Assembly: GCA_950097015.1 (NCBI GenBank)
Contig: CATNEN010000007.1
Coordinates: 3,596,001-3,660,000, forward strand
Source of the DNA: Macrostomum hystrix
Lineage: Eukaryota; Animalia; Platyhelminthes
Reading direction: 5' to 3'
Length of the DNA stretch: 64,000 nucleotides
Shown here: positions 7,283-44,400 of the stretch, piece after piece
Numbering within the stretch: the stretch's first letter is position 1
How the letters are laid out: every line of letters starts with the position of its first letter
Program-made: the position numbers and the translations under genes
Notes under the pieces: generated by a model
The model's input: only the letters and a program-made list of their open reading frames with translations
Databases searched by the model: none
What the model was told of the DNA's origin: nothing

Positions 7283-10200
7283 TTACCTTTTTGCACCTGC
7301 ACCAGGCACAGCCAGAATTGCACTCATTAGCTCGGCGCACTCTTTTGAGCAGCTGCGCAGTGCCAGATCGTGCAGTGTGACATTCCGTGTCATCAACAGC
7401 TGCTGATTCACGGCGCCCAGCACTCTGGGAGACTGCAAAGCGAGACTTTGAACTTTAAATATGTGCGACTCACTCTTCAGATTTAGGTAAAGCATTTTCA
7501 AATTACTATGCATCACCTCGGCTAGCATGACGAGCTGGTGCACGAGCTCGCGACCACCAGAGCTGACCAGTCGCTCCAGCCTGTTGAGCAGATCGCGCAC
7601 CCTGCCTTCTGCTTCGGTCGGATCGAGAAGCTTGCGCACCAGCAGGAACAGACTGGCATCGTAGGTAGCCCGCAGGCACTGCAGCAGAGGCCTCTCGGGA
7701 TTCGCCACCCGATGAGCTTCAGACAGTGCGATTAGAAAGCTCGGTCCGTACTTTTGAAGGCCTATAAGCAACACACTAGTCTCTTCTAGAAGCATTGTCT
7801 TCTGATGCTGAACCTGAATGGCGGCTTCAGTGACCGCTTCCGGTGTGAAAGACGCAGGCCAGAGGAGGCCGCGGACTAGGGACGTCAAGAGGCGCGAGAC
7901 TCGCTGGTCACCGAAGCTGCGAAGCACGTCCATCATGATGGGACAGCCAAACTCTACAATGGTCGTGTTTGCATGCTCAAGGGGTGGATCGGAACTTTGC
8001 AAAATGCCGTAAACCAAATTTGCACGTACGATCGAAAATAATTATATATTATATTCCACCTTTGTAGAAAATATGAAGATTTTAGACGAATATAGATAGA
8101 TAGAATAGATAGAATAGATAGATAGAATAGATAGATAGAATAGATAGAATAGATAGAACAGAATAGAATGAATAGATAGAATAGATAGAACAGAATAGAA
8201 TAGATAGATAGAATAGATAGATAGAATAGATAGAATAGATAGAACAGAATAGAATGAATAGATAGAATAGATAGAACAGAACAGAATAGATAGATAGAAT
8301 AGATAGAATAGATAGAATAGAATAGATAGATAGAATAGATGGATAGAATAGATAGAATAGATAGAATTGATAGAATAGAATAGATAGATAGAATATATAG
8401 AATAGATAGAATAGATAAAATAGAATAGATAGAATAGATAGAACAGAATAGAATAGATAGATAGAATAGATAGATAGAATAGATAGAATAGATAGATAGA
8501 ATAGATAGAATAGACAGATAGAATAGATAGAATAGATAGATAGAATAGATAGAATAGATAGAATAGAATAGATAGATAGAATAGATAGATAGAATAGACA
8601 GATAGAGTAGAATAGATAGATAGATAGAAGATAGATAGAATAAGAAGATATTATGTTTTTGCAGGAGGGCTTATGGGCAATGGCGCATCATTTGTGACAC
8701 TGGACCCGCAGCCTGTGAAGAGTCAATTTTTCCCATTCCGATGAGCCATGAGCACACACGGACACAGGTGTGTCCATCTGCCCTGACTTTCGATCTCATC
8801 GCCAGGCAGAGCTGTACACTCTCACTGTGCCTTGGAGGTTGGCCTTCAAGGGCGTAAATTGCACAACAATGCCCCTAAACCTTCTCTCCGCGGCTGCGCC
8901 CCAAATGAATGTGGCCTCGCTGCGGAAATCGAGCTCAGGGATCTTGGTGCGAGAGGCAAGAGCGTTAGACCGCTCACCCACCCCCTCGAAGATCGATGCA
9001 AGTTTGGATTAAAAGCAGCTAACCATTGCTTTGATGATTTGCTCGCGAGAAATCCCAAAATAGTTCAGGCTTTCAACTAATGTCGGAGATCCAAGCATGC
9101 CACCCCAACAACAAGTACATCTGGCGCAGTTCTTACGCTTCTTGTAGTCTGAGCAGATGCAGCTGAGGCTCTTGCGACCGTAGAGAAGCAGTTTGTCCAC
9201 CATTGCGTAGGGATCCAAGTCCTGAGGCGTGTAGTTTTGAAATATTCGTTCGTTAATCGAAATCAGGGGTCTGGGTACTTCTACGTTCCTGTAGTTCGCG
9301 GGCCAAGAGACATTTCAAAGGAAGATCGCGGGCCGCATTGACATGGGAGAGATGGACAGGGGAGAGATGGACAGGGGAGAGATGGACAGGGGAGAGATGG
9401 ACAGGGGAGAGATGGACAGGGGACAAATGAGACATGGGAGATATGAGACAGAGGAGAGATGAGAAAGAGGAGAGATGAGAAAGAGGAGATATGAGACAGG
9501 GGAGAAATGAGACATGGGAGATATGAGACAGAGGAGAGATGAGAAAGAGGAGAGATGGGACAGAGGAGAGATGAGACAGAGAAGAGATTAGACAGGGGAG
9601 AGATTAGACAGGGGAGAGATGAGACAGGGGAGAGATGAGACATGGGAGATATGAGACAGAGGAGAGATGAGAAAGAGGAGAGATGAGACAGAGGAGAGAT
9701 GAGACAGAGAAGAGATTAGACAGGGGAGAGATTAGACAGGGGAGAGATGAGACAGGGGAGAGATGAGGCAGGGGAGAGATGAATAGGGGAGAGATGAGAC
9801 GGGAGAGATAAGACAGAGGATAGATTAGACGGGAGAGATGAGACAGGGGAGAGATGAGACAGTGGAGAGATGAGACAGGGGAGAGATGAGGCAGGGGAGA
9901 GATGAATAGGGGAGATATGAGACAGAGGAGAGATGAGAAAGAGGAGAGATGAGAAAGAGGAGAAATGAGACAGGGGAGAAATGAGACATGGGAGATATGA
10001 GACAGAGGAGAGATGAGAAAGAGGAGAGATGAGACAGAGGAGAGATGAGACAGAGAAGAGATTAGACAGGGGAGAGATGAGACAGGGGAGAGATGAGGCA
10101 TGGGAGAGATGAATAGGGGAGAGATGAATAGGGAGAGATGAGACGGGAGAGATAAGACAGAGGATAGATTAGACAGGGGAGAGATGAGACAGGGGAGAGA

Positions 10201-11467: not shown

Positions 11468-11775
11468 AATGGCAGAACGGTCTATCGCGTTTGCCTCTCG
11501 CGCCAAGGTCCCTGAGCTCGATTCCGCGGCGAGGCCCACATTCATTTGCATGGGACGCAGCTGCGGAGAGAAGGCTTGGGTGCCTGGGGATCATAAATTG
11601 CCTGACAATACGAAAGTCGGGGCAGATGTACATACCTGAGTGTGTGTGTGTGTGTGTTTGCGTACAGTATCTGTGTGCGTGTATGATTTGGAGTCAGCGG
11701 AATGGGCAGAATTGCCTCCTTGCTGGCTGCGGGTCTAGTGTCATTAAATGATTTGCCACTGCCCGCAGCCCTGCA
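11468..11775 (+). mobile_element. tRNA-derived SINE, family A
   Basis: GGCAGAACGG..CCAAGGTCCCTGAGCTCGATTCCGCGGCGAGGCC head; 3' stem GGCTGCGGG...CCCGCAGCC. Confidence 0.85.
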
Positions 11776-21369: not shown

Positions 21370-24109
21370 TCACTTGAGGAACTTGTGCTGCAGCAGCCTG
21401 GAGGCCTCCGGTCGATTCTGAGGCAACTTTTCAACACACAGGTGGTAGAAGTCGCGCAGCTCGCTTGACATGCTGCGCGGGAGCTCCGGCATGGGCTTGC
21501 TGTTAACCGTCACGGCCAACAAGAACTGCATTCGAATTTCACTGTTCGGCGGCTCCATGGTGCCCATTTCGAACACGGTGCAGCCCAAGGCCCAAACGTC
21601 TGTCTTTGAAGTATAGGCGACACCGTCTTCTTCCGGAGACAGAATCTCCGGGGCCATGAAGAAGGGAGTGCCGCACTGGGTCTGCGTCATCATCATCTGC
21701 GAGCTGCTGATCTCGCGGGCGAAGCCAAAGTCAATGAGCTTGACAATGCCCGGATTGGTGAGCATGATGTTTGAGGACTTGATGTCGCGATGAATGATCG
21801 GCTTTGGTAGGCTGTGCAGGTGTTTCAGGGCTTGGCACACCTGCGCCAGTTTGAGTAGGGTAAGTTTGATATAGGAACGCACACTGTACATTCGGTCAAG
21901 CTTCAGGAAAAACTCATAAAACATCAGATTAACACTTGCCTGAATGGTAAACTTCTTAATACCATCTTCAGGGATAGGCTTCTTCTGCTGTCTCATGATT
22001 ACTTCAATGGTGCATCCAGATAGGAGTTCCGAGAAGATGTAGAATTTTCCATCCTTCTCTTCGGCCTTGAGGAAGCGAACAATGTTCTCGTGTCGGACGT
22101 AGCGTAGGAGGTCCATAGCCTGCTTTTCCGACATAAAGATTCGCCTCTGGGCTTCAGTGCTCATCGGCACGTGCGGCTTGATGACCTTCACAGCCACGAA
22201 CTGGTGCCGGTCGGTGAAGGCTTTGTAGACCTTGCCGAAGCCGCCGGTTCCTATTGGCTTCTTCTTGTCATCCTCAATAAAATATTCCCAGTGCTCGAAG
22301 GAGTCGTCAATCTCCGCTGTCGGTGTTGACGGCTGGCGTGGAAGACTTGGGTAGGATGGCGGGTCGGGCGTCGGCCTGTGAGGTTTTGGGAATTAGTGAC
22401 GTAGGTTTGCTTAGAAAAGGTTTTCATAGATCGAACGCGAAAAAACACGGATTACAGCATTTACTCACTCATCTGGGTTGCTCACGGATGAACGGCCGTT
22501 GCCGCCGCCACCGCCGCCGCCCCCCTGCAACAGGTGCAGAAGGTGCCGATTGCCCTGTCCGTTAGCAATCTGGGCCGCGTTCTTGCCTTTCTTGTTTCGA
22601 GCATTAAGATTGGCACCGGCCTCAACCAGCAGCCGCACCACCGTACAGTTCATATCATCGGCGCCCGCAGCGATCATGATGGGCGTGTTGCCGTCGGAGT
22701 CCGGCTTGTCCAGAGCCACTCCGTTCTGATCGAGATAGCCGAGGAGCTGGTGATTAGCGTGTTTAGCAGCGTAGTGAGCAACCGTCTGGCCAGCACGGTC
22801 GGCCACCCGGATGTTGCAGCCGCGTTTGTGCAGCAGCTGCACAGTGGCGAAGCAGTTTTTCTCGGCGGCGCACAGAATGGCTGTCTCGCCCTGACGGTTT
22901 TTTAGATCCAATGGTGCTCCATGGTCGGCCAGCAGCCTCACGATGGCCTCCTGTTTACAGTAGGCGGCGCGTAGAGCTGGACTCACACCGTTTGCGTTCT
23001 GATGGCCAGCATTGCAGCCCTCCTTGAGTAGGTACTCAACCGTCTCTAGTGGCCCGACTTGGCATGCTGCCAGCAGCGGCGTTTCACCGTCCTTTGAGTT
23101 AGGCGTATCGAGCATCAGGCCATGGCTGCGCAATGTTTTTAGCAACGGTAAGCGTTGCGCAATGACCGCAAGGTGAGCGTAGCCGTAGCCATTGCGATCT
23201 TCGAAGGTGAATTCCTTTGTTCTACTGGCCAGAAGGCGCACGATCCGGTCCGGAGAGCTGCTGACTATCGAACAGGCGAGCGGCGTCAGGCCCTGACTGT
23301 CAGCAGCGTCCGTGTTTGCCCCGGCGTCCAGCAGCATCTTCATGGCTGTCTCGCGACCATTGAGCACCGCTGAAAACAGCGCAGTTCGCTTGTTGGAATT
23401 CCGGTGATTTACCCGGCTCCTGGCCAGCAGGATCTTCAGAATTTTGTCGTGTCCGTTTTGAGCAGCGCAGAACAGGGGGATGTTGCCTTCAGAGTCGGCG
23501 ATGTTGTAATCGGCGCGACTGCGCTCCAGCCGTTCTATGATGTCTAGGTGACCGTTTAGAGCAGCCACAAACGCCAGAGTGCGACCATCGCTCAGTTGAG
23601 CATCGCACGCAGATTTTTTCGGGTTGCGGTCCAGCCAGAACTCAATCAGCTCAAGGTTGCCCTCCTGCGCGCAGTGCATCAGTAGCGAGCCGTGGATTCG
23701 CTCGTCAAATTGCAGAGCTGATCGTTTCCGCTCCATCATCTTGACCAGGCCGAGGTTGCCCTTGATCAGAGCCAGGTCCGTCGCTGTCAGGCCCTTCTTG
23801 TTCTTTAACCGCATCTCGGCGTTCCGTTCGACAAGCACTAGAGCTGTCTGCCACTCCTTCTGCATTATGGCTATCATCAATGGAGTGTCGCCGTCTTCGT
23901 CAGCGACGTCAACGTCTGCTCCAGAGTTTAGCAGTGTAGCTACAGTGCTCTCGTGGCCTTGGTGCGCAGCTAGGTGTAGCGCCGTCAGCTTCTTCTCGCC
24001 ACGGAAGTCGGGATCAACGCCGGAAGCGACCAGTCGCTGGCACATCGAGCCGTTGCCATCGATGGCAGCTTTCAACAGCAGCATCGAGTTACCACGATTC
24101 TGACCTTGG

Positions 24110-24148
<39 letters not shown>

Positions 24149-24357
24149 ACCAAGTCAGCCAGTAGCCTGGCAAATAGACTGGCACCACTGCTGGAGTCTA
24201 GGGAGTGGTGGGGAATAATTTTTGTGAATGCCACTACTTGAAGTGGTAAAGGCGAATGTTTTAACCGAATGACTATTATCATCAATACACAAATAGACTG
24301 TGGAATATTCGTTTTTTTGCTTTTGTCAAGCAGGTGTGGTGCCAGGGCACTGAGCAC
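21370..24357 (-). CDS. Ankyrin-repeat protein with C-terminal Ser/Thr kinase (STE/MAP3K-like); true 5' end uncertain
   Basis: About 16 ankyrin repeats after a polyQ tract. The exon ends GA|GTGAGT at 22469 and joins in frame to an exon from 22375 (IGTGGFGKVYKA, VAVK, HRDIKSSN, DFG, GTPFFMAPE, DVWALG). A 99-nt GC-AG intron lies at 21841-21939. Confidence 0.88.
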
Positions 24358-26123: not shown

Positions 26124-26157
<34 letters not shown>

Positions 26158-27456
26158 ATGCATAGCCCACTTATTGGGACTCGCGTATGCATAGTGACCC
26201 GTGCTCTTGGGCCGAAATAAGTGTTGGGCCAGGCCCAAGAAGTGCGTCCAACACTGCCAAAAATTTGGAGCTATTAGGAAAAAAAAATATCCACTGAAAC
26301 CGCATTTTTTTTGTCCAAAAGAAAAAATTCATTTTTTTCATTTGCAATTGAAGATTTTTTATTAATCTAATAATAATTGCTGGCCCAATAATGTGAAAAC
26401 TGATGCAAACAAACGTAACTGACCCAATAGTGTTGTTCGGACAAAATGCGAATTATGTGCTCTAGCATTTTTGAATCGAATTTTCAAAGCCGCTACTGAT
26501 AGTAGTATTTTCGAATTCGTTTTAGGCGGCTCGCTTTTAAAACTCGCGTTCAATGAGACTGACTCCCCTCTGTATTTCTAATGCACAGTGGCTGTGTGAC
26601 TAGGAAGTAATGAATGTTACGTTGATTGTGAAACTGTACTTCTGTCCATAAAAATCCCCGACTGCAACTGAATGTGCAGGTATAGCCTTTTAGTTATTTA
26701 CAATTTATAACGCTAGTTACAGGATGGAGGGTGGGAGCTTTGTTTGACGACAGAATGCAAAATCTAGAATATTCATGCGTTCATATTAGAGATTTTAACA
26801 CAGTTAAAATTATTGTATTATTCGTAGTGCAATGCAAAAGAGCTATGCGCTTTTAAAGATTTAGTATTTTAGCATTGTCGCATTAGACATTACTAAATTC
26901 CCAAATATTTATCTACCAATTTAAAAGAACTTTTAACTAAGATTCAAATTCACTTATGGAGTCCAGAAGCTGACTAAACAGAACAGTGAGAACTCATACT
27001 CCTAAAATGAAAACATTTTTGCTCAATGAATCAAAGGCATCGATTCTACAAGAATCAAATTCCAGATGACAAGTTGTGGCACTATGTATTGCCTATATTT
27101 TACTAGCGCGCAGCTCTTAAAGGCTGTCTTCAAAATGCCATCAGTTTATCACACATGCAGACTTATGCCTATGGATCATTTAAAAGGGCCTCGTGTTCTG
27201 GGGTTGTTGTTGTTGACCTGAAAGTGTTGGGACAGCCTATTGGGGGGCTCTTGCTCTATCCACTGAATTAATCGATAACGCCCCATCTACATTTAATTGG
27301 ACGCCTTGTTTCACACCCTGTACAATTTCACAAACCCCTAAAATCTTTTACCCGTCTGAACCAGTAAGAAATGAACGACATACAAGCCCTACTAAGCCAA
27401 AGAGGGTGGACCCCTGTTCTGTCTTTATTAGCATAAAAAAACTAGTGAAAAGCTTT

Positions 27457-27553
27457 TTAAGTGACTGCTTCGATCCTTAGTATTTTAAGTGACTGCTTCG
27501 ATCCTTAGTATTTTAAGTGACTGCTTCGATCCTTAGTATTTTAAGTGACTGCT
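27457..27553. repeat. 28-bp tandem repeat (GTGACTGCTTCGATCCTTAGTATTTTAA), about 3.5 copies, just upstream of the ATG
   Basis: Directly visible; each unit carries a TTTTAAG acceptor-like site. Confidence 0.9.
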
Positions 27554-27563
27554 TGTCGCCACA

Positions 27564-30500
27564 ATGAGGCGACAAGCGAACAAGAAGGGAAGAAAGAAAA
27601 AGAAAGACTCTTCAGAATCAGAATACCATCCGAACTTTCGCGTGGAAGTAAGGTTCGACAAGAGGCACCCATCTTATGGCCAAACGAATGTTGTATATTT
27701 GAAAGACTTGACATACTCGGGCAAGCTGTGCCATGGCACCAGAGTCTCAATGGCTTGGAAAGCGAAGGAGTGGTTCGGTACCGTCACAAATATGTAAGTA
27801 GCAAATTACTTTCCAACATTTGTCTTTCTTTGTTCGCTTAACATTTTGAGACCACTAGCCAAAAGCAATTTTGATTTTCGGAACACTGCTTTGCAGATAT
27901 GTCGACGTTGATCCGCTTCCAGCTGGTGCAGTTACCTCGGGACTTCGCACTACACTAACAGGTAGGCGGCGAATAAACTTCTGGAATTCACTGAATCAAA
28001 AAGCCTATAGCGTATAGATATATTTCACCTAAAAGAGATGCAATATGCTTTATGCAGTTTAGGGAATATGAACGTACTCGAACTTAAATTTGATTTCGTG
28101 AAATTTACGGAATATAAAACGCGCCTTTATAAAGAGCATCAAGAACTGTACATTTCGATGCAATCCCAATCTACGATCATTACAGCTGAAGAACTTAGTC
28201 AAGGCAAAACTCCCGGCGATTGCTTTGAGGACTATTATATTGGTAAGTAATAAAAGCATTGTCACCAAAATTAAGAAAAAACCCGATTCGATTCGATATT
28301 AAAAAACTCACACGTTACAGAAAAGGAGAAGGAGTACATAAATAAACAACTCAGCGAAAAATCCAGTCAGTCCAAGAGAGAAAACTACGCTGATTCTGAG
28401 AGACAAGTCAGCTGCCTTGATTCGCTTCCTCCTGCAGCTTCACACACTGCCAAACTGGACGATCTCAGCAGCGCCTCCAATCGATCCGCTGATTATGAGA
28501 GACAAGTCAGCTGCCTTGATTCGCTTCCTCCTGCAGCTTCACACACTGCCAAACTGGACGATCTCAGCAGCGCCTCCAATCGATCCGCTGATTATGAGAG
28601 ACAAGTCAGCTGCCTTGATTCGCTTCCTCCTGCAGCTTCACACACTGCCAAACTGGACGATGTTAGCAGCGCCTCCGATCGACCTGGTGAGTCCCGCTTG
28701 ACAATGCCATATGAATAAGAGCTAAAACAGACCAATTTTAGCATTGAAATATTAAAAACGCATTTCCTGGAACACTGCTGAAAGACACTAAACAGTCGGC
28801 ATTTTTCAGCTTAGAAGACAGGGCATTGTTGGGACATGCAGTTCAAAGTGTGTTCTGATAAAACAGGGCATTTTTAGGACATGCAGAACAAAGTGTGTCG
28901 CGATAAAACAGGGCATTGTTGGGACATGCAGATCAAAGTGTGTTTCGATTCAACAGGGCATTGTTGGGACACAAGAGATTATGTAAAGTGCATGCAGGAG
29001 ATAAAAGTGTTCAATGTTTTCTCCCTTGTGTGCAGATTCGGTTGCTAAGGAAAAGAAGAAGCGAGGCAGCAGCGGCAACGGCCCTTCGGCTCCAAAGTCT
29101 GTCAAATTTGACGATGTCAGCGGCGCCTCAAATCGATCCGCTAATTCTGAGAGCGGAAGCGTCGGTGTCGATTCGCTTCCTTCTGCAGCTTCACAGACTG
29201 CCAAACTGGACGATCTCAGCAGCGCCTCCAATCGATCCTCTGATTCTGAGAGACAAGTCAGCTGCATTGATTCGTTTCCTCCTGCAGCTTCACACACTGC
29301 CAAACTGGACGATCTCAGCAGCGCCTCCAATCGATCCGCTGATTATGAGAGACAAGTCAGCTGCCTTGATTCGCTTCCTCCTGCAGCTTCACACACTGCC
29401 AAACTGGACGATCTCAGCAGCGCCTCCAATCGATCCGCTGATTATGAGAGACAAGTCAGCTGCCTTGATTCGCTTCCTCCTGCAGCTTCACACACTGCCA
29501 AACTGGACGATGTTAGCAGCGCCTCCGATCGACCTGGTGAGTCCCGCTTGACAATGCCATATGAATAAGAGCTAAAACAGACCAATTTTAGCATTGAAAT
29601 ATTAAAAACGCATTTCCTGGAACACTGCTGAAAGACACTAAACAGTCGGCATTTTTCAGCTTAGAAGACAGGGCATTGTTGGGACATGCAGTTCAAAGTG
29701 TGTTCTGATAAAACAGGGCATTTTTAGGACATGCAGAACAAAGCGTGTCGCGATAAAACAGGGCATTGTTGGGACATGCAGATCAAAGTGTGTTTCGATT
29801 CAACAGGGCATTGTTGGGACACAAGAGATTATGTAAAGTGCATGCAGGAGATAAAAGTGTTCAATGTTTTCTCCCTTGTGTGCAGATTCGGTTGCTAAGG
29901 AAAAGAAGAAGCGAGGCAGCAGCGGCAACGGCCCTTCGGCTCCAAAGTCTGTCAAATTTGACGATGTCAGCGGCGCCTCAAATCGATCCGCTAATTCTGA
30001 GAGCGGAAGCGTCGGTGTCGATTCGCTTCCTTCTGCAGCTTCACAGACTGCCAAACTGGACGATCTCAGCAGCGCCTCCAATCGATCCGCTGATTCTGAG
30101 AGACAAGTCAGCTGCATTGATTCGTTTCCTCCTGCAGCTTCACACACTGCCAAACTGGACGATCTCAGCAGCGCCTCCAATCGATCCGCTGATTATGAGA
30201 GACAAGTCAGCTGCCTTGATTCGCTTCCTCCTGCAGCTTCACACACTGCCAAACTGGACGATCTCAGCAGCGCCTCCAATCGATCCGCTGATTATGAGAG
30301 ACAAGTCAGCTGCCTTGATTCGCTTCCTCCTGCAGCTTCACACACTGCCAAACTGGACGATCTCAGCAGCGCCTCCAATCGATCCTCTGATTCTGAGAGA
30401 CAAGTCAGCTGCCTTGATTCGCTTCCTCCTGCAGCTTCACACACTGCCAAACTGGACGATGTTAGCAGCGCCTCCGATCGACCTGGTGAGTCCCGCTTGA

Positions 30501-33500
30501 CAATGCCATATGAATAAGAGCTAAAACAGACCAATTTCAGCATTGAAATATTAAAAACGCATTTCCTGGAACACTGCTGAAAGACACTAAACAGTCGGCA
30601 TTTTTCAGCTTAGAAGACAGGGCATTGTTGGGACATGCAGTTCAAAGTGTGTTCTGATAAAACAGGGCATTTTTAGGACATGCAGAACAAAGTGTCGCGA
30701 TAAAACAGGGCATTGTTGGGACATGCAGATCAAAGTGTGTTTCGATTCAACAGGGCATTGTTGGGACACAAGAGATTATGTAAAGTGCATGCAGGAGATA
30801 AAAGTGTTCAATGTTTTCTCCCTTGTGTGCAGATTCGGTTGCTAAGGAAAAGAAGAAGCGAGGCAGCAGCGGCAACGGCCCTTCGGCTCCAAAGTCTGTC
30901 AAATTTGACGATGTCAGCGGCGCCTCAAATCGATCCGCTAATTCTGAGAGCGGAAGCGTCGGTGTCGATTCGCTTCCTTCTGCAGCTTCACAGACTGCCA
31001 AACTGGACGATCTCAGCAGCGCCTCCAATCGATCCGCTGATTCTGAGAGACAAGTCAGCTGCATTGATTCGTTTCCTCCTGCAGCTTCACACGCTGCCAA
31101 ACTGGACGATCTCAGCAGCGCCTCCAATCGATCCGCTGATTATGAGAGACAAGTCAGCTGCCTTGATTCGCTTCCTCCTGCAGCTTCACACACTGCCAAA
31201 CTGGACGATGTTAGCAGCGCCTCCGATCGACCTGGTGAGTCCCGCTTGACAATGCCATATGAATAAGAGCTAAAACAGACCAATTTTAGCATTGAAATAT
31301 TAAAAACGCATTTCCTGGAACACTGCTGAAAGACACTAAACAGTCGGCATTTTTCAGCTTAGAAGACAGGGCATTGTTGGGACATGCAGTTCAAAGTGTG
31401 TTCTGATAAAACAGGGCATTTTTAGGACATGCAGAACAAAGCGTGTCGCGATAAAACAGGGCATTGTTGGGACATGCAGATCAAAGTGTGTTTCGATTCA
31501 ACAGGGCATTGTTGGGACACAAGAGATTATGTAAAGTGCATGCAGGAGATAAAAGTGTTCAATGTTTTCTCCCTTGTGTGCAGATTCGGTTGCTAAGGAA
31601 AAGAAGAAGCGAGGCAGCAGCGGCAACGGCCCTTCGGCTCCAAAGTCTGTCAAATTTGACGATGTCAGCGGCGCCTCAAATCGATCCGCTAATTCTGAGA
31701 GCGGAAGCGTCGGTGTCGATTCGCTTCCTTCTGCAGCTTCACAGACTGCCAAACTGGACGATCTCAGCAGCGCCTCCAATCGATCCGCTGATTCTGAGAG
31801 ACAAGTCAGCTGCATTGATTCGTTTCCTCCTGCAGCTTCACACACTGCCAAACTGGACGATCTCAGCAGCGCCTCCAATCGATCCGCTGATTATGAGAGA
31901 CAAGTCAGCTGCCTTGATTCGCTTCCTCCTGCAGCTTCACACACTGCCAAACTGGACGATCTCAGCAGCGCCTCCAATCGATCCGCTGATTATGAGAGAC
32001 AAGTCAGCTGCCTTGATTCGCTTCCTCCTGCAGCTTCACACACTGCCAAACTGGACGATCTCAGCAGCGCCTCCAATCGATCCTCTGATTCTGAGAGACA
32101 AGTCAGCTGCCTTGATTCGCTTCCTCCTGCAGCTTCACACACTGCCAAACTGGACGATGTTAGCAGCGCCTCCGATCGACCTGGTGAGTCCCGCTTGACA
32201 ATGCCATATGAATAAGAGCTAAAACAGACCAATTTCAGCATTGAAATATTAAAAACGCATTTCCTGGAACACTGCTGAAAGACACTAAACAGTCGGCATT
32301 TTTCAGCTTAGAAGACAGGGCATTGTTGGGACATGCAGTTCAAAGTGTGTTCTGATAAAACAGGGCATTTTTAGGACATGCAGAACAAAGTGTCGCGATA
32401 AAACAGGGCATTGTTGGGACATGCAGATCAAAGTGTGTTTCGATTCAACAGGGCATTGTTGGGACACAAGAGATTATGTAAAGTGCATGCAGGAGATAAA
32501 AGTGTTCAATGTTTTCTCCCTTGTGTGCAGATTCGGTTGCTAAGGAAAAGAAGAAGCGAGGCAGCAGCGGCAACGGCCCTTCGGCTCCAAAGTCTGTCAA
32601 ATTTGACGATGTCAGCGGCGCCTCAAATCGATCCGCTAATTCTGAGAGCGGAAGCGTCGGTGTCGATTCGCTTCCTTCTGCAGCTTCACAGACTGCCAAA
32701 CTGGACGATCTCAGCAGCGCGTCCAATCGATCCGCTGATTCTGAGAGACAAGTCAGCTGCATTGATTCGTTTCCTCCTGCAGCTTCACACACTGCCAAAC
32801 TGGACGATGTTAGCAGCGCCTCCGATCGACCTGGTGAGTCCCGCTTGACAATGCCATATGAATAAGAGCTAAAACAGACCAATTTTAGCATTGAAATATT
32901 AAAAACGCATTTCCTGGAACACTGCTGAAAGACACTAAACAGTCGGCATTTTTCAGCTTAGAAGACAGGGCATTGTTGGGACATGCAGTTCAAAGTGTGT
33001 TCTGATAAAACAGGGCATTTTTAGGACATGCAGAACAAAGTGTGTCGCGATAAAACAGGGCATTGTTGGGACATGCAGATCAAAGTGTGTTTCGATTCAA
33101 CAGGGCATTGTTGGGACACAAGAGATTATGTAAAGTGCATGCAGGAGATAAAAGTGTTCAATGTTTTCTCCCTTGTGTGCAGATTCGGTTGCTAAGGAAA
33201 AGAAGAAGCGAGGCAGCAGCGGCAACGGCCCTTCGGCTCCAAAGTCTGTCAAATTTGACGATGTCAGCGGCGCCTCAAATCGATCCGCTAATTCTGAGAG
33301 CGGAAGCGTCGGTGTCGATTCGCTTCCTTCTGCAGCTTCACAGACTGCCAAACTGGACGATCTCAGCAGCGCCTCCAATCGATCCGCTGATTCTGAGAGA
33401 CAAGTCAGCTGCATTGATTCGTTTCCTCCTGCAGCTTCACACACTGCCAAACTGGACGATCTCAGCAGCGCCTCCAATCGATCCGCTGATTCTGAGAGAC

Positions 33501-36500
33501 AAGTCAGCTGCCTTGATTCGCTTCCTCCTGCAGCTTCACACACTGCCAAACTGGACGATGTTAGCAGCGCCTCCGATCGACCTGGTGAGTCCCGCTTGAC
33601 AATGCCATATGAATAAGAGCTAAAACAGACCTATTTCAGAGTTGAAATATTAAAAACGCATTTCCTGGAACACTGCTGAAAGACACTAAACAGTCGACAT
33701 TTTTCAGCTTAGAAGACAGGGCATTGTTGGGACATGCAGTTCAAAGTGTGTTTTGATTAAACAGGGCATTGTTGGGACATGCAGATCAAAGTGTGTTTCG
33801 ATTAAACAGGGCATTGTTGGGACATGCAGATCAAAGTGTGTTCCGATTCAACAGGGCATTGTTGGGACACAAGAGATTATGTAAAGTGCATGCAGGAGTT
33901 AAGAGTGTTCAATGTTTTCTCCTTTGTGTGCAGATTCGGTTGCTAAGAAAAAAAAGAAGCGAGGCAGCAGCGGCAACGGCCCTTTGGCTCCAAAGTCTGT
34001 CAAATTTGACGATGTCAGCAGCGCCTCTGATCGATCACCTGAGTTCAGGGGCAACGTCGGGACAGGCGTGATGTTTGAGAAGTTGTCTTTTGTTGGCCAT
34101 TCTCAATGTTCTATTGAGGCTGACGCATTTTTGGGCGTGGCAGATGATGCTGCAACGTTTGCTCTTCTTGAACCAGTTACTGCAACGTTTACTCGAAGTG
34201 GATTGTCTTTTGCTGCTGGTTGCGGTGACCCGTATGCTTTGTCACCGTGTGACTCAGCCCAAGGCCTGGTGGATTCTGACTGTAATCTGGTTAATTGTGA
34301 ACTAACCGAAGTTCCTGTCGAACATGTTTTACGTGATTTTAGCGATCTATCAATGCCATCTCAGCTTGTGAACTATGTTAGTACCGAAGAAGTAAAACAT
34401 CATGAAAGTAGTCTTCATTCTCATCACGGTGATATGTTTGGCCCTCAGACGACACATGAAGTTTTACCTGAAGGCGGCTCAACTGTAAGACAAATCGAAG
34501 AGAACTCTGAATCTGTAGACTTTGATTTGCCGTGTAAAGCAGAAAAATGTCAACCTAAAGGCAGTGTAGTTTTGCAGAAGTTTGTTTCCTCGATTACCAA
34601 GATCCACCACTGCAAGTATTGTGGCAAAATGTTGACAAAAATCTCGAGACATTATAAAACTTCTCACAAGAAGGAATCTGATGTTATGCGCATACTTAAG
34701 ATGCACAACAAGTCACGCCGAAAGAGGGCGTTTAAAGCTTTAGAAATTGAAGGCGACTTCGTTCATAATAGAATAGTGTTAGCAAAGCAAGAGGGAGAAC
34801 TGATAATTGCTAGGCGGCAAAAGGACGATGAAAACAGTCCGGATGACTTTTTGCCTTGTCATACGTGTTTTCAATTCATAAAAAAAGATCTTCTTTACCG
34901 ACACAAGAATACTTGCTCAGGAAGCCTGCACGATATTCTTGAGGAAGACAGCAATGACAATGAAAGTGAGGATTCAATAGACTCTGCGAAGTCAATGCAG
35001 GAAAAAGAAAACCGAAGTGTATCGACCAAATACTGCCAGCAGCTGTCACGCCTTCTATTGTCAAATCCGGCAGCGGGATCGAATCTCTTAGATCCTGAGT
35101 CAGAACTCTACAAGACCGTGCTGTCGAAGCTTGCTGCTGACGAGGTTTTTGATGTTATTTGTACGGAGGATCTTATTCTTCGTCTCGGAGAGCGGTATAG
35201 ATCAAAGCAGAAGAAGCTTAATCGGCAGCATGTTTCAAGCGTTATCAGAGATGCTGCACGCATCTTAATCGAGCTTCGGAAAATTCACGGAAATCATAGC
35301 TTGAAGCATTTCTTACAGCCACACTTTTTCGACGACTGGATCGACATAATAAGAAAATTATCTAAAGATGCACCATCATTTGCACTTCGAGCAGGAAATT
35401 TTATTCCTCATCTATGCAACATAGTGATTGGAGACGCCATCCGTAAAGGGGATGATAGTTTAAAAAAGTCAACGTCCGATTTCCTTACGTTGAAAACCAC
35501 GGAGTACCATCCACTTGTCACCGCTAAATGCTTGAAAGAACTAAACGATAAAGCATCACGTCCACAGGACTCAGTGCCTCTGACGGAGGACATCGTCGCC
35601 GTCTCTACTTTTATTAAATCCGCAATCGCTAGAACAATTGAGGAGGCAGAAGATGCGCTAAAATGTAGTAAATCGCCAATGCCTCGTTTGTATCGCGAGC
35701 TTGTTTACTTGGTAATGACAAAACTAGCATTTTACAACCGACGTCGCTCAAGCGAGATTTCTGAATTGGATTTTGATCTTCTAAAGTCCATGCATCAATC
35801 CCACACGCATGAGGATTTGCATAAGTACATGTCACCGCTAGAGCAGAAACTGGCTAGCAGATTAAAAATTGTCAACATAGCAGGGAAGAAAGGCCGCTCC
35901 GTCCCAATACTAATTGAACAGCTTTGCTGGAATGGAATCCTTTGCATTGAAAAGTGCAGAAAACAGGCCGGAGTTAAGGACAACAACAACTTCGTATTCG
36001 CCATTCCGGGCTACGATGAGTCTGTATACCGCTGTTCAGTTGCGATCGACCAAGTTGTACGCCTCGGTAACTTGGAGTTGAAGAGACCGGAATTACTACG
36101 ATCAAGATATTTGAGACGCCACTGCGCTACTGTTTCACAACTGCTTGATTTGACGTCAGCAGAACTAGACTGGCTTGCACGGCACCTTGGACATGACATA
36201 ACAGTTCACAGGCAGTACTACAGAATGCACCAAAACACACTTGAGTTGACCAAAGTTTCACGAATTCTGGAAATTATGGACAGCGGAAAACTTGGTCACT
36301 TTAAGGGCCGAAAACTCGAGGACATTACTTTAGAAGAAATGGACAGTGTGCTACCCATCGGAGCCGACGAAATCGACGTAGAAGCCTCTGCGTCCGCTGA
36401 ACAAAGTAAGCAGCCGAAGCGAAGCAGCAGCAACGATTATTCAAACGATTGCTCGCCTTTAACGGTTGCTAAAGTCAGTCCAAGTCAGTCCAAGAGAGTT

Positions 36501-37248
36501 GGCCTCAGCAATCAAGGTCCAACGACTGCCCAACATGGCGACAGGTCACCACCGTCCAGCAAAGAAGACGGCATCACAGACAAGTTTTCCCGGAGAGTTG
36601 AAAAGGCAAACGCGAAACATTCAAAGGAAGCTTCGAAGTCAGGTGAGGAGACGATAAAATAAAATAAATATCGTAATATATTCAGCTTGAAATCCTATAT
36701 AAATAGGAGCTAAAGCAGGGCTGATAAACTTTTCGGTGTTAATATTAAAAACGCATTTCCTGGAACACTCCTGAAACTGAAAGACACTAAACAGTCGGCA
36801 TCTCTCAGCTTAGAAAACAGGGCATTGTTGGGACATGCAGATCAAAGTGTAATGTGATTGTATTGAAGAGCACATTGTTAGGATATGCAGACCAAAATGT
36901 GTGTTCTCATTGTGTGAACTCCCTGATAGTGTTTTGACGACTTAGTGCTAGGTTATGTTATTGCTGTATGTATGGTAGGTATGGTATGGTATCTTATTTA
37001 AGTTAGATATTGCAGTGTTCCGCATTGCCTCATTACGTGCATATGTCTACTTTCCTTTTTCAGCAAAGCGGCTCACAGATGAACAGAAGAAGGATATGTG
37101 CGAGGCATTCGCTCACTTCATTCAACAAGGCACTCTTCCTGGGAAGAAGGATATTCTGGAGCTGCGGCCTGATTCGATGGCTAACATTGAATGGAAAAAA
37201 ATCAAAGACAATTTGAGGGTAGCAGTGGTTAAGGCTCGCAACAATTAG
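27564..37248 (+). CDS. Multi-exon tyrosine recombinase-domain protein, predicted about 2180 aa
   Basis: Exons 27564-27793, 27897-27961, 28063-28242, 28321-28686, 29036-29536, 29886-30485, 30833-31234, 31584-32183, 32531-32833, 33183-33584, 33934-36642 and 37064-37248. All are GT-AG and sum to 6543 nt in one frame. YR motifs: YNRRRSSEI (R), GKKGR (K), YLRRH (R), RHLGH (H), HRQYY (Y). Also CxxC..H..H and CxxC..H..C zinc-finger-like motifs. Confidence 0.8.
28395..33935 (+). repeat. Nested tandem array: six intron+exon units (652-947 bp), each exon with 1-4 extra 99-bp repeats
   Basis: Exon lengths 501, 600, 402, 600, 303 and 402 fit 204+99n; introns are 347-349 bp and near-identical. Confidence 0.95.
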
Positions 37249-38224
37249 TAAAAGAAGTTATTCGGCTTTCTTGCTTTTCGGGACTAATAGTTGCAATTTT
37301 CTGAATTAAAAAAAGAGCTATTACTTATCAAATGAGATAAATTACATGACATCAACAAAATGATGCTTCAAACACAGGATATGTGTCGTTTGTATGTAAT
37401 TTTGTGTAGCAAAGGACTCTGGGTGGACAACATTTGTATCAGAAGGTTTTTTAAGCTAGTTTATTGGTCTTGCTGTTACTTTTATATTAGTAGACTCAGT
37501 CTGAATATTATTGTTAGTAAGATGCGAGGATTTTAATTCAATGCCCTTTTCACTGCTGGTACAACAGTACCAATACAAAACAGTACAACAGTAAATTACG
37601 GAAGCTCTGTACCTTTTTGGAAAGGAGAAGAAAAAAGATTTACAGCTATTTACATCAGTAGACACTAGACAATGACCAATAAGGAGTGCGTGCTAGCTTT
37701 GCTTTGGGCGGCGGGCGGGTCTAGCTGTCAATATTTGTCATTGTTCTTTTATTTTCATTGTAATTTCATTATCCTTTCAATATTGTCTGTTTTTTTCACG
37801 CTTTATGCCCAATAATCAATTCATCGTGAACTTATTCAGATATAATCATTTTAATGTTTTATTAAAAGAAACAGACGAGCATGAGCAGGAAACAATGCCA
37901 CCTTGCACACACTACTGCTACAGAATGGAATGGATGGCTGGGGAAGGGGCACGGAGCAGCTGATGGGCTACAGGCACTGCGGCACTTTCGATCCGCTTTA
38001 ACAAGAAAATAAAGGGAGGGAATTTTCCCCAGCGCGATAAAAAGATTCCTTATTGATTTAATGCGTGATAAAATAGGATTAGACAAATAGCTACCAGTTT
38101 CTATTGCCATGCTACTTTTGAGACTACTGTTGTCTAATCATTTTATCACTAATTAAATCAATTAGTATGCTTTTATCGCTTTTCGTGTTTAATCATCAGT
38201 GATTTATTATTTTCGTGCTTCTTT

Positions 38225-38815
38225 GTATGTCTCATCTATTTTATCGCCAGTTAAATCAATTATTTCATTTTATTGCTTTCTATGCCTTATCTTCTACTTA
38301 TCGCAGTTTAATTCAGCAGTTATCATTTTAATGCCTCTTTTAATGTCTAATTATCCATTTTATCGCCATTTAAATCAATTATTTCATTTTTATTGCTCTC
38401 TATGCCTAATCTTCTACTTATCGCAGTTTAATTCAGCAGTTATCATTTTAATGCCTCTTTTAATGTCTAATTATCCATTTTATCGCCATTTAAATCAATT
38501 ATTTCATTTTTATTGCTCTCTATGCCTAATCTTCTACTTATCGCAGTTTAATTCAGCAGTTATCATTTTAATGCCTCTTTTTTAATGTCTAATTATCCAT
38601 TTTATCGCCATTTAAATCAATTATTTCATTTTATTGCTTTCTATGCCTAATCTTCTACTTATCGCAGTTTAATTCAGCAGTTATCATTTTAATGCCTTTT
38701 TTTAAATGTCTAATTATCCATTTTATCGCCATTTAAATCAATGATTTCATTTTTATTGCTTTCTATGCTTAATCTTCTACTTATCGCAGTTTAATTCAGC
38801 AGTTATCATTTAAAG
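38225..38815. repeat. About 120-bp AT-rich tandem repeat, about 5 copies, inside the right arm of the YR element
   Basis: TTAATTCAGCAGTTATCATTTTAATG recurs with a period of about 120. Confidence 0.9.
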
Positions 38816-40020
38816 CTTTTTTTTAAGTCTAAAATTATACGAGTATATTTTCACATTTTTTCATCTTTCATATAACTTCTAAATATTTGTCAATTCGATA
38901 AATAATTATTCACTGGACATTCACAAACATAATTTTTTTAAATATAATTAATTATCGTTTCGTTATATTAAAGTTTGTTATATTCCCGCTCAGTTTTTTT
39001 CACAATGGACCTTAATCTTTCTTAGTGCAGGACCCATTCGACGCACCAAAAATGCGTATTAGACTTCTATTAGTAAGTGGAGAGTGCATTTGATCCTAAA
39101 ATGTTTTAAAACAGTGTTGGACGCATGTGTCGGGACACGTGTGTGTATAATTTTTCGTGTGTCCGTGCAGTCCCTATAAGTGCCCACTTTTATACAAGTG
39201 GCCAATAAATGCCCGGTGCCCGTTTGTGTGTGTGTGTGTGTGTCTAACAAATTACAAGCTTTTGGAATATCGCATAATGATCCTTAATTCTTAACCCTTA
39301 AGACAAGACAACTCCAGTAGGCATCAGAATCCCGGATCCCAACACTCGGCCTCAAGCCATAAACTGGCAGCCCGCATGAGTATTTTAACCCTCTCTGTGT
39401 CTGCTTTGTACAAATGAGATTAGACAATGCAACTAAGCAAATCAATTTGCTTTGGTAAGGTAATTTGAGAATTATCAGCGAGAAAACTTTTGAGTCGAAG
39501 AAAATAATGTCGAAACTTCGGCCCTGTTTCTCTCACGAGACAAGATAATGTTATAACATAGATCTAAATTAATATTTACGGACACTCTAGAGACGTTCGC
39601 AAACCTTCGATACAGTACTGAGCAGTTCTAGAACTTTTATTGTAAATAAATTTCCAAACACGGTGAAAGCTTAGTGGTAACTAGTACGTGTACGTGCAGT
39701 TAACCGGTGGCACAAGACACGAATCATTAAATTTGTTATGCTCGTATTATGGCATTCAAGCCGCGAGCTATACGTCCTCTCTACAGAGTTTTCACTATTT
39801 TATTCGTAGAGGATCGCATATATATTCCATAGCTTTGTGTTGCATTTAAGTCGCAAGATTTTTTTAACTATCGGAGGGATTTGTAGCCAAGTTGCTAGAG
39901 CTTCATGCAATGACCCAGCTATGCCTGGGTTGCGAGCGAGAAAGGTAGAAAACGTGCCCTCTAGCATGGGCGCGGGCGGCTGTTTATATATTGTACTTTA
40001 ATCTATACGAGTATTATTAG

Positions 40021-40600: not shown

Positions 40601-41483
40601 AAGTGCAATTTCAAAAAGGAGATGTAAGAATGAAGGATTTAAGAAACATCTTCCGCTGGAACAATGGTAGAATGACCATTTCTCGCGCCGGCCGACGACG
40701 TGGCAACGCGAGCCACCTGTGCAGCGCAGTATATAGTGACCGATTTTCTGCCTCAGTCTAAAAGGGTATTTAGTTCTACTCAATTATTGTTTTTCTACGT
40801 TACTCCATTTTAAAAAGTAAATTTCTTTTTTAAACGATAGGAATGCTTACAAAAATATAGATAAAACTATATTTGAATGACAAGGATAATTATTTACCAA
40901 ATGGAAATGCTATCAACATACAATAACAATGACCTAAAAAGAAAAAAGAGAAATCAAATGTATCGAATCGACTGCAAAAATAAATATGCTAATTTAATTA
41001 AAGTTCTGTAATTAAATTAATATATACATGCATATAAAAAGAGAAATATTTGTAAAATAATGCATAATTTAATGTAAAAAAGAAACTAAAATGTTTTAAA
41101 TAAAATAAAATATACATAAATCCAGTCACACAAGTCTTAAAGTCCCGATCTTTAACGTATCTCTGCAGCTAGATACGTTAAATTATAAATTTAACCGTTT
41201 AACTTGCTTTTTGATGACTGACGTACTGTTATAAAAAAATCAACGTTAGCTGTCCCATTCACATACTAATGTTAGATAAAATGCATTAAATGCAAAAAAT
41301 TTAATACTTAAAAAATTATATAACGAAGAATAGAATAGTAAATTCTTGTTCTAAGAAGTGTTTTTTTGTTTTAACTGTGCGCGCAAAAAAGCGCTCTAGT
41401 TTGTAATTGTTCGTCATTTTAAATTTCACAGAACGGCGCTCGAGCGTTGTTTAGGGAAAAAATTAGTTTATTTGATAATAATC

Positions 41484-44400
41484 ATGTCTAGCAATAAGCC
41501 AAGTTTCTTTATTTGTATAATATTACTTATTTTATCACTAGCATCAGTTAGTTCTACTGATTCATCAACAAACACCCCGGATGTTACTGGACCCGTTGGG
41601 GCCTCCGAGTGCTACCGGAATCGAAAGCCGAACATGTGCTTGACCACATTCTGGAACTTGGCCTATGGCAGGGTGCCAGTGGCCACCAACACCTGCGGCG
41701 CCACGAATTCAGAGAAATTTTGCGTGCAGACCTCAATCCAAGCCACCGCAATTCAGGACCGCTACTGCTCCTACTGCTCGCAGGCCGAGATTGATAAGTC
41801 CCACAATCCCAAGTTTCTCACGGATTTTAACAAGGACAAGTTCTTGAAAACCTTCTGGCAGAGCCAGACATTGTATGAGACGTTGACTCGGAGCAGCAAG
41901 TTTAATGTTAATATCACTATCGACTTTGGTAAGCCTTTATCGTTCAGTTTGTCCAATTCCTCGTCTTAAATGTGATATTCGGGATAAATTAAACTAGGCA
42001 ACCACACACACACACATACACACACGCAAATTTCAATCGCAGCTGAAGCTGGCACCTATTTTACAACTGGGTGAACTGTTTTGCGCTGAGATTCGAACCC
42101 CCGAATGCATTTTGCGCTGAAATCAAAAGCTCTAACCACGTCACTGCAGGGCTATGGGCTCCATTTTATTAGTTGAAAGGGAAGAGAACTCGATTAAAAA
42201 ATGATTAATAAGTCAACAAAAAATTGTGCTACAAATTTTTTATTTACACACAATAAAGACTTCGGGAAATGTGAAATAGTCTTAATCTTGCTCCCTTATA
42301 ACGAGAAAAAGGTTTAGATCTTTTAAAGACCCTTGACAAGAAAAAACAAATTCACTGACCAGCTGCTACACATTGGGTTCAGGCATCCAGACCCAGGTGA
42401 CCTACATCCGGCTGCAGTTCCAGTCGCCCCGGCCGCAGAGCATGGTCATCTATCGGCGAAAGAACCGCACCTCGGCCTGGGAGCCGTGGGCCTACTTCAG
42501 CCAGAACTGCGAGGCGCAGTACAAGATGGTTTCGGACGAGCCGATCAGCAATGAGAACCGGTACAAACCAGTTTGCAGCACCCGCTTCTCGGACATGGTG
42601 CCGCTGAGCGACGGCACAGTGCTGTTCGTATCCTTGATGAACAGGCTGGAGGACAACGACAACGATGAGTTCTGGAAGAATAGCGAGCTGCAGGTGGGAT
42701 GTCTTGCTTTTTGAATGGCAGATACTTTAGAATATACTCTACGGCATCATCTTAGGCTAAGCTACCGATCCTGTCATGGTCTGCAAATTTGCTCCCTTGA
42801 AAACAGGAATGGGTTCTGGCCTCCGACATTCTGATCAGCCTCGATCGGCTCAACACTCACGGAGATACATTCAGCGCAGACGTGCTCTACAAGTACTTTT
42901 ACGCAATCACCGACATCACAGTTGGCGGCAGGTGAGAGTAGCACATGTCTTGTCAGGTAACTGAGTTAGTACCAAACCACTAAAGATTACTCCAACAACT
43001 CCTGCCCAGGTGTCAGTGCAACGGTCACGCAGCAGTGTGCAACACGAACCCCAGCACTCAGGAACGCTACTGCTTGTGCCAGCACAACACCGAGGGCAAC
43101 CAGTGCGAGAAGTGCCGCAAGGACTACAACGACAGGCCCTGGCGGGCGGCAACCAAAGAGAATGCTTGGGACTGCCGGCCCTGTAACTGCTCAGGCAACA
43201 GCGAACAATGCATTTTCGACTGGGATCTGTACTACGCTTCTGGCAATGTCAGTGGTGGCCGCTGCATCAATTGTCGCGACAACACCGAGGGCCCGCACTG
43301 CGAGAAGTGCCTGGCCAATCACAGGCGACCTTCGGCTGGAGCCAGCGGCTGCGTGGCCTGCAACTGCCACCCGCTGGGCTCGCAGCACGGCCAATGCGAC
43401 GATCAGGGCCGCTGCGTCTGCCAGCCGGGAGTCACCGGCGACAAGTGCGACAGGTGCCTCACCGGATACTACAACCTCACGGCTAGTGGCTGCCTGTGAG
43501 TTCTGCCGCTTTCTATGATTATATATTGTATAATATGTGGAAACGCATTTTCTACAAGTGCAGCTGCACCACTGGGCCTTGCTCATACATTGTATAGTAA
43601 TAAAATCGAGTTAGATTATTTCAGAAACACTTGAGAACTGTGTTCACTCGCTGTGACCTGGGCTTCAGTGAGTGCCTAGTATCTGACCCTCATGGTACCG
43701 CTTCTCAATGGCAACAAACTCCAATTCTAACTAAATCGTGGAGAAGCTTGCTCAATCAGATATATTAATAGGTGTATAGATAACAAAAGCGGCCTCTCTG
43801 CTCTACCTGCCTGTATATTGCCAGGGTCAAATTGTGGCACTAGCGGCAAGCACTTAGGTAGGAAGAGATAATAAGCCAGAAGCAAGATTTTGTTAATAGC
43901 CACCACTTGAAAAAACTGGTCAGGCCTAGAGGCGGTTATTTGAGCTTTGAAAATGTTCTGAATAAATGAGTTACTGGGGCAGTAAACTATCAAACATTTC
44001 AAAACCCATTTAAACAACTGAATCGGATTATTTTTTAGGGGTATTCGGAGGTCTACGAATGAAGGCCGATTGTTGCACTCATTGAATGTCTATGGCCATA
44101 ACTTGCTGCATCTGTCTTGCTAAACTGGTCATAACCTCGGGCCATAGACATTTGTAGCGCGCACTCAGACAAAATTTCGAGCGCATTGTTGCAAGTGGAG
44201 AATATCGTGTACTAAATATAGAAGGCAATCGTATGCTGGATACATCTGCGGCTGCTGCAGGCCCATTTCCAACGAAACCGATTCTGTGTAGGGCCTGGGC
44301 TTTGGGATGCAACGGGGGCATGGAAGACAAAGAAAGGGAAGGAAGGAAGGCATATGGCAGGCCTATCCTTCCCAAACCCCATGCAAATGAACAGAACTTT

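What the first reader, a model, noticed from the sequence alone, without database searches (positions are those of the whole stretch)
26155..39224. About 13-kb intron-rich tyrosine-recombinase element sitting in a (TG)n microsatellite with bipartite inverted end motifs
Seen in the sequence: a large YR exon (R-K-R-H-Y motifs YNRRRSSEI, GKKGR, YLRRH, RHLGH, HRQYY), (TG)n tracts in the same orientation on both sides, and two motif pairs mirrored at the ends (CACTTAT[T/A]GGGACT and the exact 14-mer TGCGTCCAACACTG). The motif spacing differs between ends (75 vs 57 bp). A short palindrome CCACTT-TTATAC-AAGTGG with a 6-bp spacer lies just inside the right end. Established knowledge: Crypton-type elements use a YR, and YR sites are inverted arms around a 6-8 bp spacer. 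Inference: this is a microsatellite-targeting YR transposon, unusually large and multi-exon, and possibly a new or poorly described lineage.
Basis: partly seen in the sequence, partly recalled or inferred. Interest (0 to 1): 0.85.

Follow-up and report, generated by a model that had tools for sequence, protein, structure and literature searches.

The report
Microsatellite-targeting transposon amplifying its end sites
This is a real jumping gene that lands only in GT simple repeats using a cut-and-rejoin enzyme (most likely the catalogued but little-studied CryptonV kind), and it is long because one exon-plus-intron unit carrying copies of the element's own end signal was duplicated in tandem, a pattern that recurs in flatworm and fish relatives.

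Summary
The element is real: 13,072 bp (26154-39225) between (GT)14 and (GT)9, with one 12-exon gene whose large exon folds as a tyrosine recombinase with intact catalytic residues. Near-identical copies of relatives in Macrostomum lignano, hake, catfish and a beetle sit between (GT)n tracts at different sites, always with GT on the coding strand. That matches Repbase's microsatellite-targeting CryptonV, though I could not compare sequences with it. The scan found such elements before (s1-084975, s1-344279, s1-291349).

Three corrections. (2) Seven of the 11 introns come from a young 5.2-kb tandem array of exon+intron units. (3) The new point: in all four elements with such an array, the array intron carries 2-4 copies of that element's own end motif (shuffle tests 0, 0, 3 and 41 per 1000; this window is the weak one). 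I found no report of this in the held papers.

Likely mechanism: excision as a circle and reinsertion by GT-spacer exchange.

The parts
26126..26153 (+). Left part of the target microsatellite, (GT)14
26154..26265 (+).
   Evidence: 76-77% identical to M. lignano left ends
27455..27554 (.). 28-bp tandem repeat (3.6 copies) just upstream of the start codon; no end motif
27564..27793 (+). Coding exon 1: basic stretch plus a small beta domain with weak Tudor-like resemblance; 65% identical in M. lignano
   Evidence: best Z 5.7; weak
27897..27961 (+). Coding exon 2 (predicted; conserved in M. lignano)
28063..28242 (+). Coding exon 3 (predicted; acceptor placed by reading frame)
   Evidence: inference
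28321..28686 (+). Coding exon 4 with three 99-bp repeats, ending in the array's donor site
28687..33933 (+). Tandem array: seven 347-349-bp introns (first six 99.7-100% identical, seventh 95%) and six symmetric phase-1 cassette exons of 303-600 bp (29036-29536, 29886-30485, 30833-31234, 31584-32183, 32531-32833, 33183-33584), 936 codons of Ser/Ala-rich repeats, each starting with a basic cluster
28818..33869 (+). 45-bp repeats inside each array intron, carrying 22 copies of the end-motif core TTRTTGGGAC, all on the + strand
33934..36642 (+). Large exon: acidic linker, two zinc-finger-like motifs (about 34600-34920), helical region and tyrosine-recombinase domain; catalytic codons R 35745, K 35886, R 36114, H 36192, Y 36219
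36643..37063 (+). Last intron, a diverged paralogue of the array intron (65% overall), with one end-motif copy at 36821-36834
37064..37248 (+). Last coding exon: small helical domain, 59% identical in M. lignano; stop at 37246-37248
38234..38832 (.). 120-bp AT-rich tandem repeat (5 copies); no end motif
39112..39225 (-). Right end: 14-mer 39112-39125, inner motif 39170-39185, non-conserved palindrome 39184-39201, outer motif 39199-39214 within the imperfect inverted repeat
   Evidence: 81-82% identical to M. lignano right ends
39226..39243 (+). Right part of the target microsatellite, (GT)9

Best explanation
An intact, autonomous tyrosine-recombinase DNA transposon, most likely of the CryptonV group, inserted into a (GT)n microsatellite of a Macrostomum-type flatworm. 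SHOWN: boundaries at the GT tracts; recent mobility of close and distant relatives; fixed orientation; YR fold with intact catalytic residues under purifying selection; one motif repeated in a conserved, asymmetric pattern at both ends; the same motif inside the introns of a tandem exon+intron array. INFERRED: the protein binds the end motif, pairs the two ends and excises a circle whose joint is right arm + (GT)3-4 + left arm. It reinserts by strand exchange between that GT spacer and any genomic (GT)n; because GT repeats are not palindromic, only one orientation works, and no true target duplication is made. INFERRED, weaker (about 0.6): the intronic motif copies are accessory binding sites for the element's own protein (self-regulation or help with end pairing), and tandem duplication of a frame-neutral exon+intron unit changes their number without breaking the gene, lengthening a dispensable linker before the recombinase.
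For: Six M. lignano copies 99.8% identical that diverge right at the GT tracts, five different right flanks. Two copies each in hake, beetle and catfish, 98-99% identical, bounded by (GT)n at different loci. All 13 insertions seen have GT on the coding strand. Outer motif cores lie about 21 bp from the tract on both sides; left cores near +20, +53, +71 and inverted +79 to +88, right near +21 and +49, in flatworm, hake, catfish, beetle and (left end only) leafhopper. Model pLDDT 90.6; top matches XerA, XerH, Cre (Foldseek E 1e-3 to 1e-2; VIA Z 13.9, 12.9, 11.7). R389, K436, R512, H538, Y547 at least 90% conserved in 100 relatives. Divergence by codon position 0.27/0.17/0.64. Array-intron motif test: M. 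lignano 0/1000, catfish 0/1000, hake 3/1000, window 41/1000; ends of other species score at background, except that the two flatworm elements cross-match. Motif counts in arrays 22, 29, 20, 36 against 0-1 in 10-51 kb of flank. YR sites are inverted arms around a 6-8-bp spacer and a circle is the proposed Crypton route (PMC3212892).
Against: No CryptonV sequence was available, so membership rests on behaviour and host range. No circle, transcript or binding data. The window's own intron test is only marginal (41/1000; 2 of 145 flank windows score as high). The first His of the HxxR motif is replaced (Arg here, Thr in the consensus). The beetle element has the end plan but no array, so the array is dispensable. 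Other arrays in these elements lack the motif, and Macrostomum genomes are rich in tandem repeats (PMC5730564).
Confidence: 0.75

Rival explanations
1. The transposon is as described, but the array is an ordinary minisatellite expansion and the intronic motif copies do nothing; they are relics carried along by the duplication.
For: Tandem repeats are everywhere in this window (43 rows); the element has motif-free arrays too; each array is one event, so the high counts are not independent; the window's copies are one base shorter than the end motif.
Against: Four of four arrays, in three well separated lineages with three different motif versions, hold clusters of 2-4 copies of their own end motif, all on one strand; M. 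lignano has a second, unrelated 38-bp array with the core. The fish arrays were picked from protein repeats before looking for the motif.
Confidence: 0.3
2. The arrays are made by the element's own protein: binding at internal sites brings misaligned units together and promotes tandem gain and loss. The sites are a cause of the array, with no benefit to the element.
For: Copy number differs among near-identical copies: 8, 9, 9, 10+, 13, 17+ in M. lignano, 10 versus 9 in hake, 8.5 versus 11.5 in catfish. Arrays recur at motif clusters.
Against: No GT spacer sits at a unit boundary in the window's array; unequal crossing-over explains the variation once two units exist, and the window shows a two-unit 1698-bp higher-order repeat at 99.9%. 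Assembly error may add to the copy differences.
Confidence: 0.2
3. The clade is not CryptonV but a separate, uncatalogued group of microsatellite-targeting YR transposons.
For: No Pfam hit to DUF3504, GCR1_C or DUF3435 in the window protein or 70 relatives; earlier animal Cryptons were reported without terminal repeats (PMC3212892); the flatworm pair sits on a long branch (1.58).
Against: CryptonV is the described YR group with microsatellite targets; this clade is abundant in fish, insects, echinoderms and molluscs, where Repbase curation is dense. From memory (not checked here), CryptonV elements have inverted ends and some encode SET domains, as the fish members do.
Confidence: 0.15
4. A domesticated single-copy host gene with coincidental GT flanks, or an element whose crossover is the lox-like palindrome inside the right end.
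For: Purifying selection and a multi-exon structure are also host-gene traits; the palindrome has a 6-bp spacer.
Against: Relatives are multi-copy, dispersed and share sequence right up to the GT tracts on both sides; the palindrome is lost in the sister element and lies 24-41 bp inside the boundary.
Confidence: 0.04

Closest known systems
CryptonV (Kapitonov and Jurka 2012, Repbase Reports; cited in PMC8869645)
   Same: YR-only DNA transposon of animals; inserts specifically in microsatellites.
   Different: No sequence comparison was possible. I found no published account of the end-motif plan, of exon+intron arrays, or of end-motif copies in introns (only three held papers name the group; the main review was not held).
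CryptonA / CryptonI (PMC3212892)
   Same: Animal YR transposons without reverse transcriptase.
   Different: Reported without terminal repeats and without a C-terminal domain; CryptonA relates to DUF3504, which does not hit here. This element has imperfect inverted ends, N-terminal zinc-finger-like motifs and a conserved C-terminal exon.
CryptonF / CryptonS (PMC3212892)
   Same: Short shared sequence at both ends taken as the crossover; proposed circular intermediate.
   Different: Fungal and oomycete hosts, GCR1_C domain or TATGG ends; none found here.
Starships (PMC10104507) and Tn916/Tn1549, lambda integrase
   Same: YR excision and reinsertion at a preferred site; lambda and Tn1549 integrases use extra arm-type sites besides the core (own knowledge); both appear among the fold matches.
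   Different: No DUF3435 hit, no cargo genes; the extra sites here lie in introns and vary in number.
Galileo / Foldback elements (PMC3688188)
   Same: Transposase-binding sites multiplied by tandem repeats inside the element.
   Different: DDE transposase, and the repeats lie in long terminal inverted repeats, not in coding exon+intron units.

Membership tests
Crypton (superfamily) | Encodes a tyrosine recombinase with catalytic R-K-(H)xxR-H/W-Y | tested here: met
   Fold matches and conserved residues; first His of HxxR replaced across the clade
Crypton (superfamily) | No reverse transcriptase or DDE transposase in the element | tested here: met
   All ORFs and exons accounted for
Crypton (superfamily) | Dispersed, near-identical copies with sharp shared ends | tested here: met
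   Shown for sister and distant families; not shown for this exact family
Crypton (superfamily) | Short direct repeat at both ends as crossover, no terminal inverted repeat (as described for CryptonF/S/A/I) | tested here: inconclusive
   GT units are a direct repeat on both sides, but imperfect ~26-bp inverted repeats are present
Crypton (superfamily) | Circular excision intermediate | not testable with these tools
CryptonV | Specific insertion in microsatellites | tested here: met
   13 insertions in 6 families next to (GT)n, one orientation
CryptonV | YR groups with Repbase CryptonV proteins | not testable with these tools
   No Repbase or Dfam sequences; review not held; tree built only from unnamed relatives
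CryptonA | DUF3504-type YR; no terminal repeats | tested here: not met
   No DUF3504 hit; inverted ends present
CryptonF | GCR1_C domain after the YR | tested here: not met
Starship | DUF3435 captain recombinase and cargo genes | tested here: not met
DIRS / Ngaro / VIPER | Reverse transcriptase and RNase H beside the YR | tested here: not met

The most novel reading that the evidence does not exclude
These transposons keep a variable-number array of their own recombinase-binding sites inside the introns of the recombinase gene. Gain or loss of frame-neutral exon+intron units would tune how much protein is made or captured, a self-set activity dial that arose more than once in flatworm and fish elements and has not been described for a eukaryotic transposon.
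Probability: 0.3. Interest if true: 0.75.

Novelty: new variant of a known kind. Interest (0 to 1): 0.55.

Why it matters
Crypton transposition has not been demonstrated experimentally (PMC13565253). This intact element supplies exact ends, a predicted binding motif, a predicted circle joint and a simple target, with an end plan conserved across three phyla, so the long-standing circle model can be tested directly in a tractable flatworm or in cell culture. A YR that integrates in one orientation into (GT)n could also be a useful tool. The end-motif copies in tandem exon+intron units link transposon self-regulation to exon duplication, and explain a class of 'uncharacterized' repeat-rich gene models in fish and invertebrate annotations.

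Tried and rejected
Pfam on the big exon: nothing real; the PDB sequence profile hit only zinc fingers weakly, so the YR call rests on fold and motifs. Palindrome as a lox-like site: rejected, not conserved. The 14-mer as the defining end motif: rejected, it is family-specific at the right end. A candidate second left end at 11640-11657: no motif pattern and no YR nearby. The ungapped end-motif matrix scored the window's intron weakly (28/1000). Sea-cucumber, Diabrotica and leafhopper loci: no complete pair of ends within the fetched DNA; two look-ups returned nothing. Atlas searches on exon 1 and the last exon gave no named family.
Full report
Observation. The described features are present. 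A (GT)14 tract at 26126-26153 and a (GT)9 tract at 39226-39243 bound 13,072 bp. The ORF at 33912-36662 holds the named motifs. The best relative is a Macrostomum lignano protein (64% identity), so the window is from a Macrostomum-type flatworm (inference).

The enzyme. Pfam does not recognise it. A model built from 100 relatives has pLDDT 90.6; its top structural matches are XerA, XerH, Cre, integron and Tn1549 integrases (Foldseek E 1e-3 to 1e-1; VIA Z 13.9 for XerH over 298 residues). R389, K436, R512, H538 and Y547 of the modelled part are conserved in at least 90% of relatives and are intact here; the His-to-Tyr distance of nine residues is as in lambda integrase and Cre (own knowledge). 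The first His of HxxR is replaced throughout the clade. Two zinc-finger-like motifs precede the core. Against M. lignano the three codon positions differ at 0.27, 0.17 and 0.64, which is purifying selection. There are 5239 relatives at E up to 0.001, in beetles, fish, echinoderms, molluscs and a priapulid; several fish and sea-urchin members add a SET domain. In a 38-row tree the two flatworm proteins form a 100/100 pair on a long branch among these; the tree has no outgroup and no named Crypton.

Mobility and target. The M. lignano protein lies on six contigs. The copies are 99.8% identical, end exactly at (GT)n tracts and have five different right flanks; both ends are 76-82% like the window's, while the interior DNA aligns only at the YR and last exon. 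Two copies each from hake (17.9 kb), the beetle Phaedon (9.6 kb) and a catfish (11.7 kb) are 98-99% identical and also stop at (GT)n with different flanks. All 13 insertions, including a leafhopper left end, have GT on the coding strand. For the window's own family no second copy or empty site was seen.

The ends. Left end and reversed right end align from their first bases as an imperfect repeat of about 26 bp, in the same register in both flatworm elements. The unit is one motif (about GGCAYTTATTGGGAC in flatworms, TGGGG[C/T]CC in hake, TGTGGGGAC in catfish, TGTGGCA in the beetle, TTGTCGGGAC in the leafhopper). Its layout is conserved: left cores near +20, +53, +71 and one inverted at +79 to +88; right cores near +21 and +49. 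The palindrome is a by-product between the two right copies and is absent from the sister.

The gene and the array. Exons 1, 2 and 12 are conserved in M. lignano. Exon 1 folds as a small beta domain whose best three matches are Tudor domains, but weakly (Z 4.7-5.7). From 28687 to 33933 lie seven introns, the first six 99.7-100% identical, and six symmetric phase-1 exons that repeat the start of the YR exon plus two to five 99-bp units; a two-unit 1698-bp block is duplicated at 99.9%. So the element is large through a young tandem amplification. The sister has an unrelated-looking 655-bp exon+intron array of 8 to 17+ units, hake a 745-bp array of 9-10 units, catfish a 461-bp array of 8.5-11.5 units, all with exons of 3n bases upstream of the YR exon. 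The M. lignano gene model is spliced across array introns, and that annotation was built from RNA-seq (PMC5730564), which is indirect support for splicing. The beetle element has no such array.

End motif inside the array introns. The core TTRTTGGGAC occurs 24 times in the 64-kb window, all inside the element: once at the left end, 22 times in array introns, once in the last intron (0.15 expected). In the sister it occurs in the 655-bp introns and again in a separate 38-bp array. Because tandem copies are not independent, I scored 70 bp of each end against one array intron versus 1000 shuffles: M. lignano 0, catfish 0, hake 3, window 41; ends from fish or beetle score at background on flatworm introns and the reverse. 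Within each element the intronic copies share one strand, and flanks hold 0-1 copies. Spacing between intronic copies does not match the end layout, so they are clusters of sites and not captured ends (inference). The window alone would be weak evidence; the replication in three other elements carries the claim.

Mechanism. Established: YRs exchange strands across a 6-8-bp spacer between inverted arms, and a circle is the proposed but unproven route for Cryptons (PMC3212892; PMC13565253). Inferred: the outer arms are symmetric about a pure (GT)k spacer, so excision gives right arm-(GT)k-left arm; the shortest uninterrupted right tracts are 5 units, compatible with k of 3-4. Spacer identity with any genomic (GT)n explains both target choice and the single orientation. 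The repeated motif changes with the element lineage, which points to an element-coded binder and not a host factor; the zinc fingers or the last-exon domain are candidates. The intronic copies would then be accessory sites. Multiplied transposase sites are known in Galileo's long inverted repeats (PMC3688188) and inhibitory subterminal sites in piggyBat (PMC11707139), but not, in the papers I could search, inside exon+intron arrays.

Comparison and verdict. It works like a Crypton and behaves as CryptonV is said to (PMC8869645). It fails the domain tests for CryptonA, CryptonF, Starships and DIRS. CryptonV membership by sequence could not be tested (about 0.75-0.8 likely). I rate it a new variant of a known kind, interest 0.55: the element type is catalogued, while the conserved end plan and the intron-borne end sites are specific, replicated and testable.

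Noticed in passing
window 22465-24357 (-): 630-aa ORF of ankyrin repeats with a poly-Gln stretch, 1.8 kb left of the element; host gene.
   Followed up: partly
window 41472-41969 (+): Signal peptide plus laminin N-terminal domain exon (laminin or netrin), 2.2 kb right of the element.
   Followed up: partly
window 11640-11700: (GT)9 followed by a few bases that resemble the start of these elements' left ends, but no motif pattern and no YR nearby.
   Followed up: partly
window 894-60778: About 20 unrelated minisatellite arrays (periods 9-44 bp) outside the element, as expected for Macrostomum.
   Followed up: no
window 36643-37063: The intron after the YR exon is a diverged paralogue of the array intron, so the YR exon is bracketed by related introns; this hints at an older duplication.
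   Followed up: partly
L004 15283+ and L005 17104+: Two M. lignano copies share the same right flank (one insertion on duplicated chromosomes or haplotypes) yet differ in array length (13 versus 17+ units) and tract length.
   Followed up: partly
L007 23808-24840 and L009 23086-24097: The hake element carries a second small called gene (108 aa) downstream of the SET-YR gene; L009 lies inside an intron of a P-type ATPase gene.
   Followed up: no
L014 and L015 about 7915-9625: SET-domain exons inside the catfish element, annotated as a separate gene upstream of the array.
   Followed up: no
L013 29150-29230: A second cluster of the leafhopper end motif 10 kb downstream of the gene, laid out like another left end; the right end of the first element was not found.
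   Followed up: no
P0033, P0035, P0038 (fish proteins of 2400-4150 aa): Annotated proteins with four YR-core matches each, probably merged models of stacked elements.
   Followed up: no
P0003, P0004, P0005, P0007: Beetle proteins from different families (Phaedon, Gonioctena, Agrilus) have very short branches (0.03-0.06) in the tree, which suggests horizontal transfer.
   Followed up: no
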